In this document: in pieces, positions 10,799-57,940 of the stretch
How the letters are laid out: the number at the start of each line of letters is the position of its first letter
Numbering within the stretch: position 1 is the stretch's first letter
Assembly: GCF_016432865.1 (NCBI RefSeq)
Contig: NC_067401.1
Location: forward strand, 113,460,001-113,524,000
Length of the DNA stretch: 64,000 nucleotides
Source: Antechinus flavipes
Taxonomy: Eukaryota
Direction: 5' to 3'
Notes under the pieces: model-generated
What the model saw: the letters and a program-made list of their open reading frames with translations, nothing else
The model's database searches: none
What the model was told of the DNA's origin: nothing
Made by a program: the position numbers and the translations under genes

Positions 10799-10996
10799 TC
10801 ACTTCTGCTTTGATTTCTGGCACTTCTGGGCAGGTGGACACTTCTGCTGGCAGGGAGGAGGTGCACACTTGGGAGCGCACTTAGGAGGAGGTTGGCAAGG
10901 CTGCTTGGTCTGCTGCTGTGGGGGACAACATTGCTGTTGTGGGGGGCAGCACTGCTGCTTTGGGGGGCAACACTGTTGCTGCTGTTGCTGAGACAT
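10799..10996 (-). CDS. SPRR4: Small proline-rich protein, SPRR4-like cornified envelope precursor (65 aa, single coding exon)
   Basis: ORF MSQQQQQQCCPP...TKQPCQPPPKC...QKCPPAQKCQKSKQK. Counted composition is 21 Q, 16 P, 12 C, 9 K. It has the SPRR head motif KQPCQPPP and the SPRR4-type tail KSKQK. It lies downstream of IVL on the same strand as in human, with an upstream TATA/exon 1 and a splice acceptor just before the ATG. Confidence 0.88.
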   Translation of the reverse strand: MSQQQQQQCCPPKQQCCPPQQQCCPPQQQTKQPCQPPPKCAPKCAPPPCQQKCPPAQKCQKSKQK

Positions 10997-24039: not shown

Positions 24040-24369
24040 TGTCTCTCTTTGCCTCTCCCTCTCTCTCTCTCTCTTCCTCTCTCTTTTTTCCTCCCTCCTC
24101 CTCTCTCTCTCTCTCTGTCTCTGTGTTTCTCTCTGTCTGTCTTTGTCTCTGAGTCTTGGTTTTTCTTTCTCTGTCTCTGTCTCTATCTCTGTTCCTCTGT
24201 ATCTATCTCTATGTCTCTTTCTCTGTGTGTGTGTGTGTATGTATCTATCTCTGTTTCTGGGTCTTGGTCTTTCTTTCTCTTTGTGTCTCTGTCACTATCT
24301 CTCTCTATCTCTGTTCCTCTGTATCTATCTCTATGTCTATATGTATCTGTGTCTCTGTCTCCCTATCTC
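24040..24369. repeat. Degenerate (CT)n/(CTGT)n/(GT)n low-complexity tract running into a gap
   Basis: Direct reading. Confidence 0.95.
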
Positions 24370-25484
24370 NNNNNNNNNNNNNNNNNNNNNNNNNNNNNNN
24401 NNNNNNNNNNNNNNNNNNNNNNNNNNNNNNNNNNNNNNNNNNNNNNNNNNNNNNNNNNNNNNNNNNNNNNNNNNNNNNNNNNNNNNNNNNNNNNNNNNNN
24501 NNNNNNNNNNNNNNNNNNNNNNNNNATTTATATATCCCCACATACTCTTCATTCAATGGGAAATGTTAAGAATAAAGTGTTCCATGTTAAACCATAGAAT
24601 TGTGAAGTGTTAAAACTAGGAACAACTTTAGGGCTCATCCCTATCCCAGGTCTGTGGTAGGAGGCAGAGGAGAACACAGGTGGCTTTTCTCTCAGCCTCC
24701 CCCTCCTTCCCCACACACACCCTTCAGCTGGGCCAGTAAGAAAAAAGGCCCCATCTCCACCAGGAGAACAGGTGACGCTGTTTCCTCCTCACCTGTGAGA
24801 GCTTGTCTTTGGAAGTGAGAAATCCATCATCTGGTTCTCAGTAAGGGTGTGTCAGATATTACACGTGTGCCCCTGGATCCTTTTACACACATAAGCAAAC
24901 ATGCTCTGAACTCCACCTTTATGAAGCACTCCTGTCTGCAGAATCCCTTCATACCAGATCCAAAAGAGATTACCAAAAGAGAGAAAAATCAATCAACAGA
25001 TACAAATTGAGCATGTACTTAAACACTGTTAGGCAATTAGATAAAGTATAACTCATAATTTTTCCCTCAAAGGGTTTATAGTCAGGAGTTTGCTGGAGCC
25101 AGCTCATGATAGCTCTGAATAACTGTTAAATTTCATTTTACATCTTGGAAATTAACCAAATACTACAAATCAGAGCTATACCTATTGTTTTGCTGATTGA
25201 ACTTTTAAAAAAGTGAGAAAATGTTAATAACTCAGATTAAACTTTAAAGTGTACTGAGAACACTTTTTTCTCCAAAGCACTGGTTGTTAAACATTATTTA
25301 CTGTTCACAACTAATGGATGGAAACCAAAGTGACTGAATATGGATTCAATATTTTTTGGTAAGAAAACTTTTCCATTGAAGGTGAGAGATCAAAATTGGG
25401 AGTAGGAGTTTGAGGAGACCAAAAAAAGTGTAAAAGAATTCCTTCAAAGGATAAGGCTAGAAGCATGGAAAAATAAGAAGTTCT

Positions 25485-51973: not shown

Positions 51974-52521
51974 GCTAGAAACACAAATGCCCATTCACAT
52001 CGAGATGGTCACACAGACACCTTAGCAGGACACAAAATTTAAGGATGAAATTTATGACACCACAAAGGTTATACAATCCAGTGAGTAAAGCCTCAATTCC
52101 CAAGGTGTGGATGAGGTTGGGATGGGGAAGGGGAAAGGCAGGTCAAGAGAGAGAGTGTCTCCCCTCTTTCAGTGACTGCCCCCTGTCCTAGAGATAGATG
52201 AAAAATACAGAGAGAGAAAGGGAATCATGGACATTCACAGGATGAGGTAGACCTCCCAGGCTGGAGAAAGCATGANNNNNNNNNNNNNNNNNNNNNNNNN
52301 NNNNNNNNNNNNNNNNNNNNNNNNNNNNNNNNNNNNNNNNNNNNNNNNNNNNNNNNNNNNNNNNNNNNNNNNNNNNNNNNNNNNNNNNNNNNNNNNNNNN
52401 NNNNNNNNNNNNNNNNNNNNNNNNNNNNNNNNNNNNNNNNNNNNNNNNNNNNNNNNNNNNNNNNNNNNNNNNNNNNNNNNNNNNNNNNNNNNNNNNTTCC
52501 CAATGGGGAAGCTGAGGAAAA

Positions 52522-53715
52522 TTACTGTTGTTTGAAGGGCCACTGAATGTGCTGCTGCTGCTGCTGCTGCTCCACAGGAGGAAAGTGCTCCTCTGGAATC
52601 TGTGGGACAAGCTCGGGCTCTTTGACAGGGATGGGAATTTCAGTACACCCTTGAGGTTCCTGTTGTGGTTCCAGCTGCTGCTGCTGCTGCTGCTGCTGCT
52701 CTTCCTTCTCCTCTAATTGCTGCTTTAGCTCCTCTTCTTTCTGCTCCAGCTGCTGCTCTAGCTGCTGCTCCAGCTGCTGCTCTAGCTGCTGCTCCAGTTG
52801 CTGCTCCAGTTGATTTTCCTTCTGCTCGAGCTGTTGTTCCAGCTGCTGTTCTTCCTTCTGCTCCAGCTGCTCTACTTTCTGATCCAGCTGTTGTTCCAGC
52901 TGTTCTTCTTTCTTTTCCAGCTGTTGCTCCAGTTGTTCTTCCTGCTGCACCAGCTGTTGCTCCAGCTGCTGCTCCTCTTTCTTTTCCAGCTGTTGCTCCA
53001 GCTGCTGCTCCTCTTTCTTTTCCAGCTGTTGCTCCAGCTGCTGCTCTTGCTTATGTTCTAGCTGCTGCTCCAGCTGCTCTTCTTTCTTTTCCAACTGTTG
53101 CTCTAGTTGTTCTTCTTGCTGCCCCAGCTGCTGCTCCTCTTTCTTTTCCAGCTGCTGCTCTTGCTTATGTTCCAGTTGCTGTTCTAACTGCTCCTCCAGC
53201 TGCTGCTCTTGCTTACTTTCCAGCTGTTGTTCCTGCTTACTTTCCAGCTGCTGCTCTTGCTTACTTTCCAGCTGTTGCTCTTGCTTACTTTCCAGTTGTT
53301 GTTCCTGCTTACTTTCCAGCTGTTGCTCCTGCTTACTTTCCAGCTGCTGCTCTTGCTTACTTTCCAGCTGTTGCTCCAGCTGCTGCTCTTGCTTATGTTC
53401 TGTCTGCAGCTCTTGCTTATGCTCCAGCTGCTCTTCTAGCTGCTGCTTTTGTCTATAGTCTGTCTGTTCCATTTGCTGCTCTCCTTTCTGCTCTTGCTGT
53501 GGAGTTAGAACAGGAACACATTTCACAGGAATTGTATGCTCTTCTTGCACATCTTGGACTTGCTCAGGCACTGGGCACGGTGCAGGTATTAGTGTGGGCT
53601 GCTTCACTTGTTCCTGTGGAACAGGGACAGGAATCTGGGGCAGGGGCTGCTTACACTGCTCCTGGCTGAAGGCAGGGGGAAGGCTCACAGGCTGTTTGTG
53701 CTGATAATCAGACAT
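52522..53715 (-). CDS. IVL: Involucrin (397 aa, single coding exon)
   Basis: Head has PVSLPPAFSQE and QEQVKQPT..PC. The centre is a Q/E/L/K tandem-repeat segment. The tail PVEQQQQQQHIQWPFKQQ resembles human PVEHQQQKQEVQWPPKHK (recalled). EDC gene structure and synteny with SPRR4 agree. Confidence 0.95.
   Translation of the reverse strand: MSDYQHKQPVSLPPAFSQEQCKQPLPQIPVPVPQEQVKQPTLIPAPCPVPEQVQDVQEEHTIPVKCVPVLTPQQEQKGEQQMEQTDYRQKQQLEEQLEHKQELQTEHKQEQQLEQQLESKQEQQLESKQEQQLESKQEQQLESKQEQQLESKQEQQLESKQEQQLESKQEQQLEEQLEQQLEHKQEQQLEKKEEQQLGQQEEQLEQQLEKKEEQLEQQLEHKQEQQLEQQLEKKEEQQLEQQLEKKEEQQLEQQLVQQEEQLEQQLEKKEEQLEQQLDQKVEQLEQKEEQQLEQQLEQKENQLEQQLEQQLEQQLEQQLEQQLEQKEEELKQQLEEKEEQQQQQQQQLEPQQEPQGCTEIPIPVKEPELVPQIPEEHFPPVEQQQQQQHIQWPFKQQ
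52675..52698 (-). repeat. (CAG)8 polyglutamine tract in IVL
   Basis: Eight uninterrupted ctg on the plus strand. A second (CAG)6 tract lies at 52552-52569. Confidence 0.95.
53200..53367 (-). repeat. Coding minisatellite, 7 x 24 bp, encoding (LESKQEQQ)7
   Basis: Seven consecutive units of consensus CTGGAAAGTAAGCARGARCARCAR counted directly. Confidence 0.97.
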
Positions 53716-55315
53716 CTTGTAGGTGATGTTAATTCTACCTAAAACAAAAAAAATTTAGTTACCACAAGAGCTCAAGAAGTTTGAAGGTTTGAAGTCAAGA
53801 ACAACAGGCAGCACTTGCTCTACTATTTTCCTGGCAATCAGGAGACCAATTGCTTAAGTTTAGCGTTGGGGTGGGAAAAGACTGTAGTTTGATGATAATC
53901 CTTATAGGCAGTATTAAGTTAGCATCTTGAGCCCTAGAAATTTTAAAACTTGCAGAAGCACTTTACATGTTATTTTATTTGATTCTTACCACAACCATCT
54001 GAGCTAGGTACTATTATTGTTCCCAGGGGAAAATGAAAGAGGTTAAGTGATTTGCCAGGGATTAAGCTATTAAGTATCTGTGGAGGCATTTGAACTCAAG
54101 TCTTTCTGATTCCAATTCTAGCACTTTATTCACTGTGCCCTATAGCTGTTCAACCCTTGGGGATTAAGTCTTTATCAACCACAGACTAGATCAACTCTAG
54201 GAGGTATGTGCAATTAGGGTTACATGACAGTTAGATTACTCCCCTCATCTTACATAAGATAATTTTCTTTTCCAAGGTCTCATTGGATACCGGCATTCTA
54301 TTCTAATTTATCTCTTTCCAATATAACACATTTTTGTAATTCAGTCATTTTTCAATTCTATCCAGCTATTCATGACCCGCATTGGGGTTTTCTTAGCAAA
54401 GATACCATAGTGGTTTGACATTTTCTTCTCTATCTCACTTTACAGAAAAAGATACTCAGGTAGAGTTAAGTGATTTGCTCAGGAATCACAAAGCTTATGA
54501 GGCCAGATTTGAACTCAATAAAAGAAGTCTTTCTGACTCCAGACCCAGCACTCTATAATTAACAGTATCTCAACCATTAAGAGTGGAATGAGAATATGAA
54601 GAAAAGTAAAGAAGGAAAAGGAGTCTACCCTGTGAGGTTCTTCCTTTCCTAAATTTGAAATACAGAATAAACCAATTTTCCACCCACTGAATGAGGTACA
54701 TTCAGTTTTGTGTGTGGAAAGTCAGTTCAATTTGCAGTCAAGGGTCTTGGGTCAGGATTCTGGCTCTGCAATTCACCTACCTTCTCTTTGACTCAGTTTC
54801 CTCATCTGTAAGATGGAAAGTTTCATTTAGATTACCTTTAAGATCCTATTCAGAACTAAATCTATGATCCTATCATATTAGAATGCTGATCTCCCACACT
54901 CCAAATTCTATTCCTGTAAAGAAATCATTGACAGTACAAGACACCTCTTCCCAGATGGGTTGGATGCAGGGCAAACTGGTCCCATCACCTCCTCCCATCT
55001 ACCTACCCCCATTATATGTTTCATTTCTAGTTAAATACATTATTTTAGATTGTGGTGCATTTTTGGATTATCTGTCCTATCCCTTCCCCTTTCTAAGCAC
55101 AGAGATAAAGATTCACAGGCTACGTGTACATTACTGAATTAGGGAAACATTTGGATACAGCTGGAATACATTCAGAACCTATTCAACCCATTCTTCCCCC
55201 CAATCACCAGCCAGGCTTCCCTGAGTTCTGTGGTCATGAAGTTGACCACAACGGAAGGAACACCACGTCAAAGGTGTTCAAAACAGGCCCCCAGGATCCA
55301 TTGGCTAAGACTTAC

Positions 55316-55510: not shown

Positions 55511-56539
55511 TCCCCTTGGGGGCTCTTTCTCCTAGGGACAGCTCCTATGCCACTGAAGCGTTTCTTCAGTGTGACACTCACCTGATGGGGCATCTTGCTA
55601 GGGTCTCTATTAGGTGAGGTATTTAGTCCTGGGATCCAGGGCCCTATTCCCTCTTCCCTTGTGACTGTAGCCATACCTCTTAATTTCCTCACCTGGAAAA
55701 TGGGCTGGCTGGGCCCCATTTCCCCTAGTGATTTTTGCTCTGCCTCTCCTCTGTACCTCCATTTCCTCATTTATAATGGGGGGGACAACATTTGCTGAAA
55801 TGTGAGATAAATCACAGGGTCTAAAGAAGAAAGGTACTTAGGAAGATCTGAGGATATGGGAGAAAAGGTAAAAGGGACAGAGCCCTTTACAAAGGAACAG
55901 GAAGAGGGAGCTGAAGTTTATCTTTGGACCCCCCAGTATGAAATGTGACTTCAGATTATAGAATGTTAGAAGCCATCTAGCTCAAACTCTGGCATAAGTA
56001 ATAAAACAAAATCTTATAAAAGTAATCTAGCTTTATATAAAGTCAAGGATATTTTCTTTTAAATTGGACAACGACTATGTCTCTAAAACCATCTAGGCAT
56101 TGTCTGGCATCCCATTCAAACAATGAAGCTGAAAGACCTAAAGGACCCTGTTTATATACACACTGATCACAGAGGTTGTTATTTGTCCTTCATTCTCAAA
56201 GAGGACCATGACATCAGGGAAGTGATGCTATGACATGCAAGTGAATTGGATTTAAGTGAGGGAGAGCAGTGCAAAGTTACCTGTCTCACTTTCCCCTCCA
56301 GAGCCATTTGGGTCCAGATGACAGATCAAGATGACAGTGCTATAGAGAGATGTGAGAAGTACATTGTGCTTCTCTCTTTTTCTTCGTTTAGAACATACAA
56401 TAAATATGGACATGTTGCAATGACAAGTAACTTGTTGCTGCTCCCATCTGGGGCAGATCCAATAAGGTTTCCCCGTTCTCCACAGTTTCTTCAATTTTTG
56501 CATCAAAGCTGTGGAACAAGAATTGCTGAAAAGTGATCC

Positions 56540-56939: not shown

Positions 56940-57940
56940 AATATCAATTACTTTGTCATTTAAATCTCTTCTGGTACCTGCCTACCTTCCTGGTCTTCTT
57001 AAACTCTATGTAGCTCCATTCTCTGAAATTCAATTACACTGGTTTAACGACACCTTTTCCCATTTCTGTGGGACAGCCTTTGTACTGTACTATCTGTCTA
57101 TGATGCCTGGGATTATCTCCCTCTTTACTTCTGCCTCAGTTTCCCTGGCTTCCATCAAAACAGCTTCAAGTCCATCTCCTACAGAATTCCTTTCCCTTCT
57201 CCACAGCTCTTGTAGCCTCTTCCCCCCGCCAAAAGTTACCTTATATCTCTTCTGTGTGTTTGTACACACATATACCTCATACGCACATATATGGGGTAGA
57301 GTGCACTTATTTGCTTTTTTTATGTCTTCCTCTCTAGAATTTAAGCCTCTAAACATCAGAGACTGTATTTGTCTATCTTCATATCTCCAGCACTTAGCAT
57401 AGTACCTGCCACATAGTAAGCAAATATAAATGCTTATTGTCTGACTGATGGAAATGTGTTCTTCAGAAAGGTTAATGAGATGGAAAAATCTCATCTCTCC
57501 CTCAACCATGAGCTTTTTTCTGAGACATGATACATGTTCCTTCAAGTGGCAGTTTCCAGCCTCCTTTTTCCCCAGCCTCCTTTCAACACAGATTTTTCTT
57601 AACTCCTCTCCCTCTTCTATTACTAGCTTTCTTTTCCCCCAACTTACCTCTTTCATATCAATACCCAAACTCATCCCACAGTCTTTGGGTACTACCTTCT
57701 TTATATACCCTCCTTTCCTCTCCCCCTGCTTTATCTTCCTCACCTCCTATATTCCATGCTGATATCCTTTCATTGTAGCCTATCTTCTCTTTCCTAGCTT
57801 TTCTCTGGGATCCAAGGCTGACATAAATCTTACTGAGTTCAAAGCAGGGGAGCAAGGGAGGAAAGAGGAGCTTTTGACCTTCTAAATTTGGAAATAAACA
57901 GTCCATCCCTATCTCATCCATGTTTTATCTCTCCCCCTGT
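56940..57940 (+). mobile_element. LINE-2 fragments upstream of IVL
   Basis: Pyrimidine-rich L2 body and L2 3' end (cacttagcatagtacctgccacatagtaag...aaatgcttatt). Confidence 0.6.

What the first reader, a model, noticed from the sequence alone, without database searches (positions are those of the whole stretch)
52700..53450. Involucrin repeat segment built hierarchically from 4- and 8-codon modules
Seen: a 4-codon unit LEQQ (five or more in tandem near the C-terminal end), 8-codon units LESKQEQQ, LEHKQEQQ and LEKKEEQQ, and 11/12-codon composites (LEQQ + LEKKEEQ[Q]). There is no Pro and almost no Gly in about 270 residues. From recall of the primate and other placental literature, anthropoid involucrin uses a 10-codon repeat and other placentals mostly about 16 codons. 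Inference: an independently built marsupial repeat segment, or exposure of the ancestral 4-codon building block (8 being half of 16). Leu spacings of 4, 7 and 8 suggest a continuous acidic helix with non-heptad periodicity, and each unit pairs Lys donors with Gln acceptors for transglutaminase cross-linking.
Basis: partly seen in the sequence, partly recalled or inferred. Interest (0 to 1): 0.7.

Follow-up and report, generated by a model that had tools for sequence, protein, structure and literature searches.

The report
Marsupial involucrin gene's repeat segment
This is the ordinary involucrin skin-barrier gene of the yellow-footed antechinus; its repeats really are built from 4- and 8-codon units, but the published opossum involucrin has the same design, so it is a marsupial-wide form of a well-known fast-evolving repeat.

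Summary
A 397-codon single-exon ORF (window 52522-53715, minus strand) carries a 255-codon repeat segment (53439-52675). Split at each Leu, it gives 18 four-residue units (mostly LEQQ, five in exact tandem), 13 eight-residue units (LESKQEQQ x7 in tandem, LEKKEEQQ x3, LEHKQEQQ x2, LEQKEEQQ x1) and 7 seven-residue units. These combine into 11/12-codon composites.

The gene is involucrin (IVL) of Antechinus flavipes. The evidence is a Pfam Involucrin_N hit on the head (E 1e-5, 0.6 bit below Pfam's cut-off), a conserved tail, an SPRR4-like gene downstream on the same strand, and by-eye orthology to the printed opossum IVL.

The opossum IVL printed in a 2024 supplement uses the same 4- and 8-residue vocabulary at the same site. 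The design therefore predates the opossum-dasyurid split and is not peculiar to this genome. Only the LESKQEQQ x7 block is lineage-specific.

Platypus IVL and the non-repeat part of human IVL also show Leu-phased quartets. A shared ancestral 4-codon quantum is plausible but unproven, because 75% of the repeat codons are CAG or one step from it, which favours convergence.

AlphaFold predicts one helix (84-344) with no heptad signal. Interest is low.

The parts
52522..53715 (-). Complete involucrin (IVL) coding sequence, 397 codons plus stop, in a single exon
   Evidence: ORF list and translation. The exact protein is called on Antechinus flavipes assembly GCA_016432865.2, chromosome CM028220.1 (species name from PMC11965985).
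53440..53715 (-). Pro-rich head, residues 1-92. Residues 1-64 match Pfam Involucrin_N.
   Evidence: PF10583 at E 9.7e-6, 26.4 bits against a curated cut-off of 27, when the head is scanned alone. AlphaFold predicts no regular structure for residues 1-83.
52675..53439 (-). Repeat segment, residues 93-347 (255 codons, 64% of the protein). Composition Q 96, E 74, L 41, K 27; net charge -48.
   Evidence: 192 of 255 codons are CAG or one substitution from CAG. It lies inside the helix predicted for residues 84-344.
53200..53367 (-). Seven tandem 24-nt units, each encoding LESKQEQQ (residues 117-172). This is the most homogeneous block and presumably the youngest.
   Evidence: The units differ only at four third-codon A/G positions and have no amino-acid differences. 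Self-identity at lag 24 is 0.87. No LESK unit appears in the printed opossum IVL.
52810..53199 (-). Composite block, residues 173-302. LEQQ-type quartets alternate with 7/8-residue units (LEKKEEQ[Q], LEHKQEQQ, LVQQEEQ, LGQQEEQ, LDQKVEQ, LEQKEEQQ), giving 11- and 12-codon periods and a higher-order duplication of about 58 codons.
   Evidence: Unit table. Periods 33, 36 and 57 from Tandem Repeats Finder. Best lags 36 and 33. A 174-nt spaced copy at 75% identity.
52750..52809 (-). Five exact tandem LEQQ quartets (12-nt unit CTR GAG CAG CAR), residues 303-322
   Evidence: Lag-12 self-identity is 0.76 in this block.
52675..52749 (-). End of the repeat segment: LEQKEEE, LKQQ, and LEEKEEQ followed by seven more uninterrupted CAG codons (eight Gln in a row, residues 340-347)
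   Evidence: The LKQQ-LEEK motif recurs in the printed opossum IVL, and LKQQ-LEEQ in the platypus IVL.
52522..52674 (-). Pro-rich tail (residues 348-397) and stop codon. It ends in a Gln run followed by the short IQWPFKQQ end motif.
   Evidence: By eye it matches the human IVL tail printed in the supplement of PMC4245816. Predicted unstructured.
53716..53751 (-). Inferred splice acceptor (pyrimidine tract plus AG at 53740-53739) and 23 nt of 5' untranslated sequence before the ATG. This implies a non-coding first exon further upstream, which was not located.
   Evidence: Read directly from the sequence. It fits the two-exon, single-coding-exon layout of this gene class (PMC4245816). There is no RNA evidence.

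Best explanation
The ORF is the involucrin (IVL) gene of the dasyurid marsupial Antechinus flavipes. Involucrin is a cornified-envelope precursor encoded in the epidermal differentiation complex.

Shown here: a Pro-rich head and tail flank a 255-codon array. The array is made of Leu-initiated Gln/Glu/Lys units. Its smallest unit is 12 nt (LEQQ = CTG GAG CAG CAG), and nearly all of its codons are CAG or single-step derivatives of CAG.

Inferred: the array grows and shrinks by replication slippage or unequal exchange in steps of one codon, 12 nt, 24 nt and larger blocks.
- The 8-codon unit is two quartets whose second Leu codon has become Gln or Glu.
- The 7-codon unit has lost one Gln codon.
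- The quartet plus a 7/8-codon unit makes the 11/12-codon composites.

The unit vocabulary and the site of the array are shared with opossum IVL, so the design was inherited from the marsupial ancestor. The LESKQEQQ x7 block is a later, lineage-specific amplification of an LEHKQEQQ-type unit.

My best guess on the wider question: the present arrays were amplified separately in monotremes, marsupials and placentals from a common Leu-phased Gln/Glu-rich stretch.

Function, inferred from what is established for placental involucrin: the array forms a long, acidic, Pro-free alpha-helical rod about 39 nm long. The rod displays many Gln (amine acceptors) and some Lys (donors) to keratinocyte transglutaminases, which cross-link it into the cornified envelope. 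No function was tested here.
For: Identity:
- Involucrin_N on residues 1-64, E 9.7e-6.
- An SPRR4-like ORF at 10799-10996 on the same strand, about 42 kb downstream, as expected for the IVL-SPRR4 order.
- A splice acceptor 23 nt before the ATG.
- Repeats make up 64% of the coding region. [quoted passage not shown]
- The tail resembles the human IVL tail.
- The head and first repeat units match the printed opossum IVL.
- The genome is Antechinus flavipes.

Modular growth:
- Unit table and codon distances from CAG: 192/255 codons within one step in the array, against 33/92 in the head.
- Lag spectrum and block-specific periods, and Tandem Repeats Finder periods.
- The seven LESK units differ only at synonymous third positions.

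Shared design:
- Opossum units of 4 and 8 residues at the same site.
- Platypus repeats contain the quartets LKQQ, LEEQ, LEKE and LEQK.
- The human non-repeat region contains LNKQ, LDQQ, LDQE, LVKRDEQ and LGMKKEQ.

Rod:
- AlphaFold gives a single helix at 84-344 with pLDDT 63-90.
- There is no Pro in 277 residues, and Leu periodicity has no power at 3.5-3.67 residues.
Against: - The Pfam head hit is 0.6 bit below the curated cut-off, and the whole protein gives no Pfam hit.
- Two word-based protein searches were blank, so no computed alignment to any other involucrin was possible.
- The opossum, platypus and human comparisons are by eye, on machine-read text containing letter errors. The opossum entry has lost its header.
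- There is no RNA or read evidence.
- A single-sequence AlphaFold helix on low-complexity Glu/Gln/Lys sequence is weak evidence.
- Similar Leu/Glu/Gln quartets can arise independently from CAG-type repeats.
Confidence: 0.8

Rival explanations
1. The marsupial array was built de novo after the split from placentals and monotremes. On this view the quartet resemblance to platypus and human involucrin is convergence, driven by CAG-derived codons (CTG, GAG, AAG, CAG) and selection for a Gln-rich helix.
For: No Pfam family matches the repeat segment even at E 10, so none of Pfam's involucrin repeat models does either. 75% of the codons are within one step of CAG, so few different units are possible. 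Repeat lengths differ between lineages: about 41 residues in platypus, 10 in human, and 4/8 here.
Against: The array fills the same interval between conserved head and tail in all three lineages. An LKQQ-LEE type motif recurs in platypus, opossum and antechinus, with a similar LNKQ-LEEE in human. Within marsupials the design is clearly inherited, not rebuilt.
Confidence: 0.4
2. The number or order of units, especially the seven LESKQEQQ copies, is an assembly error or one allele of a length polymorphism rather than a fixed feature.
For: Near-identical 24-nt units are hard to assemble. Mouse involucrin alleles range from 448 to 695 residues through repeat addition (PMC2192633). An N run lies only 25 nt after the stop codon.
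Against: The frame is open through all 255 repeat codons. The units carry an ordered pattern of synonymous differences rather than a collapsed consensus.
Confidence: 0.15
3. The Leu-phased array forms a two- or multi-stranded coiled coil, possibly right-handed through its 11-residue composites, rather than a lone helical rod.
For: Leu recurs every 4, 7 or 8 residues. Six 4+7 composites give local 11-residue periods.
Against: Leu periodicity has background power at 3.5, 3.6 and 3.67 residues and peaks at 3.8-3.95, so there is no straight hydrophobic seam. A net charge of -48 over 255 residues opposes self-association. From my own knowledge, not checked here, human involucrin behaves as an elongated monomer (Yaffe et al. 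1992, cited in PMC2192633).
Confidence: 0.1
4. The ORF is a different Gln/Glu-rich gene of the epidermal differentiation complex, not the involucrin orthologue.
For: The Pfam hit is just under the cut-off, and low-complexity proteins of this gene cluster are hard to tell apart (PMC10791643).
Against: The head, the tail, the gene position next to an SPRR4-like gene, and the match to the opossum entry, which sits in the IVL position of that paper's list.
Confidence: 0.03

Closest known systems
Opossum (Monodelphis domestica) involucrin, printed in the supplement of Steinbinder et al. 2024 (PMC10791643) and first reported by Vanhoutteghem, Djian and Green 2008 (not readable here)
   Same: The same Pro-rich head. 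Repeats start right after the same landmark (LTPQ.EQKG). The same two module sizes: 4-residue LEEQ/LEQQ and 8-residue LEHKQEQQ. The same LEEKKEE/LKQQ units at the 3' end. Almost no Pro or Gly in the array.
   Different: Opossum favours LEHKQEQQ, LDHKQVQQ, LGEQ and LDQQ in its own higher-order pattern. Antechinus has the LESKQEQQ x7 block, many LEKKEEQ(Q) composites and a run of five LEQQ. The comparison is by eye on machine-read text.
Human and other anthropoid involucrin (10-codon repeats)
   Same: Head and tail motifs, a single coding exon, a central Gln/Glu-rich array that is a transglutaminase substrate, and a 5' non-repeat part containing Leu-phased 4- and 7-residue units.
   Different: The human array is 39 copies (number from my own knowledge) of a 10-residue unit. 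The unit carries Gly, and many copies also carry Pro. The antechinus array has no Pro, one Gly, different unit lengths, and no match to any Pfam family at all, involucrin repeat models included.
Platypus involucrin (PMC10791643 supplement)
   Same: The central array is made of Leu-phased quartets (LKQQ, LEEQ, LEKE, LEQK), is Glu/Lys/Gln-rich and has few Pro.
   Different: The platypus repeat is about 41 residues with an Asp/Ala/Lys linker, has more Lys and fewer Gln, and its head is more divergent.
Mouse involucrin repeat-length polymorphism (Delhomme and Djian 2000, as cited in PMC2192633)
   Same: The array expands by intra-allelic addition of repeats. A homogeneous young block lies beside older, diverged units.
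   Different: The unit sequence and length differ. Polymorphism in Antechinus was not tested.

Membership tests
Involucrin (IVL) | Conserved N-terminal head (Pfam Involucrin_N, PF10583) | tested here: met
   Residues 1-64 align to profile positions 1-67 of 69, E 9.7e-6, 26.4 bits. This is marginal: 0.6 bit under the curated cut-off of 27, and seen only when the head is scanned without the repeats (one search was blank).
Involucrin (IVL) | [quoted passage not shown] | tested here: met
   255 of 397 codons (64%), of which 38% are Gln and 29% Glu.
Involucrin (IVL) | Position in the epidermal differentiation complex, upstream of SPRR4 on the same strand | tested here: met
   An SPRR4-like 65-residue ORF at 10799-10996 on the minus strand, about 42 kb downstream. 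The neighbour on the other side lies outside the window.
Involucrin (IVL) | Non-coding exon 1, one intron, and the whole coding sequence in exon 2 | tested here: inconclusive
   An acceptor-like pyrimidine tract plus AG lies 23 nt before the ATG. Exon 1 was not found: the only plausible TATA/donor pair lies in a SINE-like motif. No RNA was laid.
Involucrin (IVL) | Conserved C-terminal tail motif | tested here: met
   The tail ends in a Gln run followed by IQWPFKQQ. The human tail printed ends in a very similar motif. This is a by-eye comparison only.
Involucrin (IVL) | Transglutaminase substrate expressed in differentiating keratinocytes | not testable with these tools
No biochemical data are available.
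Placental involucrin repeat families (anthropoid 10-codon repeat; non-anthropoid repeats) | Repeat units match the Pfam models of involucrin repeats | tested here: not met
   The repeat segment scanned alone at E up to 10 gives no Pfam family. HMMER's bias filters may contribute to this blank.
Heptad coiled coil | Hydrophobic periodicity of about 3.5 residues | tested here: not met
   Leu Fourier power is 0.07 at 3.5 and 0.25 at 3.6. The peaks of about 1.5 are at 3.80 and 3.95.

The most novel reading that the evidence does not exclude
The 12-nt Leu-Glu-Gln-Gln quartet is the ancestral building block of involucrin in stem mammals. Marsupials keep it almost bare. On this reading the platypus repeat of about 41 residues, the marsupial 8-codon repeat and the placental repeats (10 codons in anthropoids, longer in other placentals) were all assembled from it. 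That would give one rule for thirty years of involucrin repeat observations.
Probability: 0.25. Interest if true: 0.45.

Novelty: new member of a known kind. Interest (0 to 1): 0.22.

Why it matters
Involucrin is a textbook case of a protein whose repeat array is rebuilt again and again during mammalian evolution. A dasyurid sequence adds a second marsupial order to the comparison. It shows that the 4- plus 8-codon design is old within marsupials while individual blocks turn over quickly. It also gives a Pro-free natural variant for asking whether a continuous helix matters for cross-linking. It does not reveal a new mechanism. Involucrin-null mice form normal envelopes (PMC2192633), so the functional stakes of repeat architecture are modest.

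Tried and rejected
- Protein word searches with the whole protein and with the head alone found nothing, and the exact protein is not in the cluster collection. That collection evidently lacks marsupial involucrins.
- For that reason, and because the protein's identity was not open, I did not spend the costly exhaustive protein search. Head-to-head scores with placental proteins would also be near the noise at that library size.
- The 2008 PNAS paper on marsupial and bird involucrin and two older PNAS papers are not held.
- The cetacean paper's supplement has an involucrin repeat figure, but its sequences are not held as text.
- Reads: runs of eight coded organisms hold parts of the stretch.
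- Exon 1: a TATA/donor pair at about 55775/55695 looked right for distance, but it lies in a SINE-like motif (gaggaaa..gagg.acagag, present twice), so I rejected it. A second pair at 57707/57650 is too close to the enhancer noted by another agent.
- Computed alignments to opossum, platypus and human involucrin were left out. Those sequences exist here only as printed text without a reference, so the comparison is by eye.
- The 334-codon ORF on the plus strand is the mirror image of the CAG-type repeats and is not a gene.

Full report
**What is there**

The minus strand carries a 397-codon ORF at window 52522-53715. A pyrimidine tract and an AG lie 23 nt before its ATG, as expected for a gene whose whole coding sequence sits in its second exon. 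An N run at 52276-52496 begins 25 nt after the stop codon, so the 3' untranslated region cannot be read, and I did not try to fill it.

The protein has three parts:
- a Pro-rich head, residues 1-92;
- a 255-residue array, residues 93-347 (window 53439-52675);
- a Pro-rich tail, residues 348-397.

**The observation**

Cutting the array at each Leu gives 18 units of four residues, 13 of eight, 7 of seven and three irregular ones.
- LEQQ occurs 15 times, five of them in exact tandem at residues 303-322.
- LESKQEQQ occurs seven times in tandem at residues 117-172.
- LEKKEEQQ occurs three times, LEHKQEQQ twice and LEKKEEQ five times.
- A quartet followed by a 7- or 8-residue unit gives the 11- and 12-codon composites.
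- No Pro occurs between residues 73 and 349, and Gly occurs only at 78 and 198.

Tandem Repeats Finder reports periods of 12, 24, 33, 36 and 57 nt. DNA self-identity peaks at lag 24 (0.69) and at 12, 36, 48 and 72 (about 0.60), against 0.45-0.50 at other multiples of three. The three sub-blocks have their own periods: 24 nt, 36/33 nt and 12 nt.

**What it is**

- The head scanned alone hits Pfam Involucrin_N over nearly the full profile, at E 9.7e-6 and 26.4 bits against a cut-off of 27. The whole protein and the array alone hit nothing.
- A 65-residue SPRR4-like ORF lies about 42 kb downstream on the same strand. This is the known gene order (from my own knowledge of the human locus).
- The exact protein is called on chromosome CM028220.1 of assembly GCA_016432865.2, which a 2025 paper names as Antechinus flavipes (PMC11965985).
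- The tail resembles the end of human involucrin as printed in the supplement of PMC4245816.
- The supplement of PMC10791643 prints the opossum proteins of this gene cluster. The entry in the involucrin position has lost its header to machine reading. It has the same head as this ORF, and its repeats begin after the same landmark.

I am confident this is the involucrin orthologue.

**How the array is built**

- The quartet is CTG GAG CAG CAG.
- The second half of each 8-codon unit (QEQQ or EEQQ) differs from the quartet mainly in its first codon. The 8-codon unit therefore reads as two quartets whose second Leu has been lost.
- The 7-codon units lack one Gln codon.
- Of the 255 codons, 68 are CAG and 124 are one substitution from CAG. 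In the head, 33 of 92 codons are that close.
- The array ends in eight uninterrupted CAG codons.
- All of this fits the long-standing idea from the Green laboratory that involucrin repeats derive from reiterated CAG (from my own knowledge; I could not read the papers here).
- The seven LESKQEQQ units differ only at four third-codon A/G positions. They are young, or held to one peptide sequence, or both.

I infer growth by slippage or unequal exchange in steps of 3, 12 and 24 nt and of larger blocks. One copy spaced 174 nt away has 75% identity.

**Comparison with other species**

The printed opossum involucrin is made of 4-residue units (LEEQ, LEQQ, LGEQ, LDQQ) and 8-residue units (LEHKQEQQ, LDHKQVQQ). 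It ends with LEEKKEE and LKQQ units like those at the 3' end here. The two-size modular design is therefore shared by two marsupial orders and was inherited. The LESKQEQQ block is absent from opossum and is a later amplification. I cannot say whether it is dasyurid-wide or younger.

Platypus involucrin has repeats of about 41 residues, and these contain the quartets LKQQ, LEEQ, LEKE and LEQK. The same supplement has further LEKELE matches beyond the platypus entry, which I assume are echidna but did not read.

Human involucrin, as printed, has its 10-residue repeats, each with Gly and many with Pro. The region before them contains LNKQ, LDQQ, LDQE, LVKRDEQ and LGMKKEQ.

A Leu-phased Gln/Glu stretch is therefore common to all three mammalian lineages, which fits a common seed. 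Such low-complexity, CAG-derived units could also converge.

**Structure and mechanism**

AlphaFold, run without an alignment, gives one helix from residue 84 to 344 with pLDDT 63-90, and disordered ends. At 1.5 Å per residue that is a rod of about 39 nm.

Leu periodicity shows no signal at 3.5, 3.6 or 3.67 residues and peaks at 3.80 and 3.95. The Leu stripe therefore winds around the helix and no heptad seam exists. Net charge over the array is -48.

It also agrees with what is reported for human involucrin, an elongated helical cross-bridge (Yaffe et al. 1992, cited in PMC2192633; not read here). The array offers 96 Gln and 27 Lys. Use by transglutaminase is inferred from the family, not shown here.

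**What could not be done**

- Two word-based protein searches were blank, and the protein is not in the cluster collection.
- I did not run the exhaustive protein search, because the identity was settled and the collection appears to lack marsupial involucrins.
- Runs from eight coded organisms hold parts of the stretch. Expression, splicing, copy number and variation among relatives therefore remain untested.
- The 2008 paper that first described marsupial involucrin is not held. I cannot say whether the 4/8 reading is already in print.
- Exon 1 was not located.

**Verdict**

This is a correct and careful observation of an ordinary gene. The kind of thing is well known: an involucrin repeat array remodelled lineage by lineage. 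The marsupial form of it is already in published sequence. The antechinus copy adds a lineage-specific block and a clean view of the 12-nt quantum. The idea that this quantum is ancestral to all mammalian involucrin repeats remains open and testable.

Noticed in passing
window 52665-53669 (+): A 334-codon Ala/Pro/Leu-rich ORF lies antisense to the involucrin repeats. It is the mirror image of CAG/CTG/GAG codons, which leave the opposite strand free of stops, and is not a gene.
   Followed up: partly
window 52276-52496: An N run of 221 letters starts 25 nt after the involucrin stop codon, so the 3' untranslated region and poly(A) signal cannot be read.
   Followed up: no
window 10799-10996 (-): A 65-residue SPRR4-like ORF with three QQCCPP repeats, on the same strand as involucrin and about 42 kb downstream. 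I used it only as a synteny marker.
   Followed up: partly
window 55690-55790 (-): Two copies of a SINE-like core motif (gaggaaa..gagg.acagag) lie in the presumed involucrin intron or upstream region. They mimic a TATA box plus splice donor.
   Followed up: partly
window 57090-57743 (-) and 56953-57402 (+): Two overlapping ORFs of 217 and 149 codons lie between the involucrin gene and the enhancer-like element noted by another agent. They have no obvious identity and may be an interspersed repeat.
   Followed up: no
window 24049-24613 (+): Ser/Leu-rich ORFs in three frames lie around an N run (24370-24525). This is a simple CT-rich repeat, not coding.
   Followed up: no
Its message says the filter also trips by chance and is no evidence of anything. 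I did not examine them or send them anywhere afterwards.
   Followed up: no
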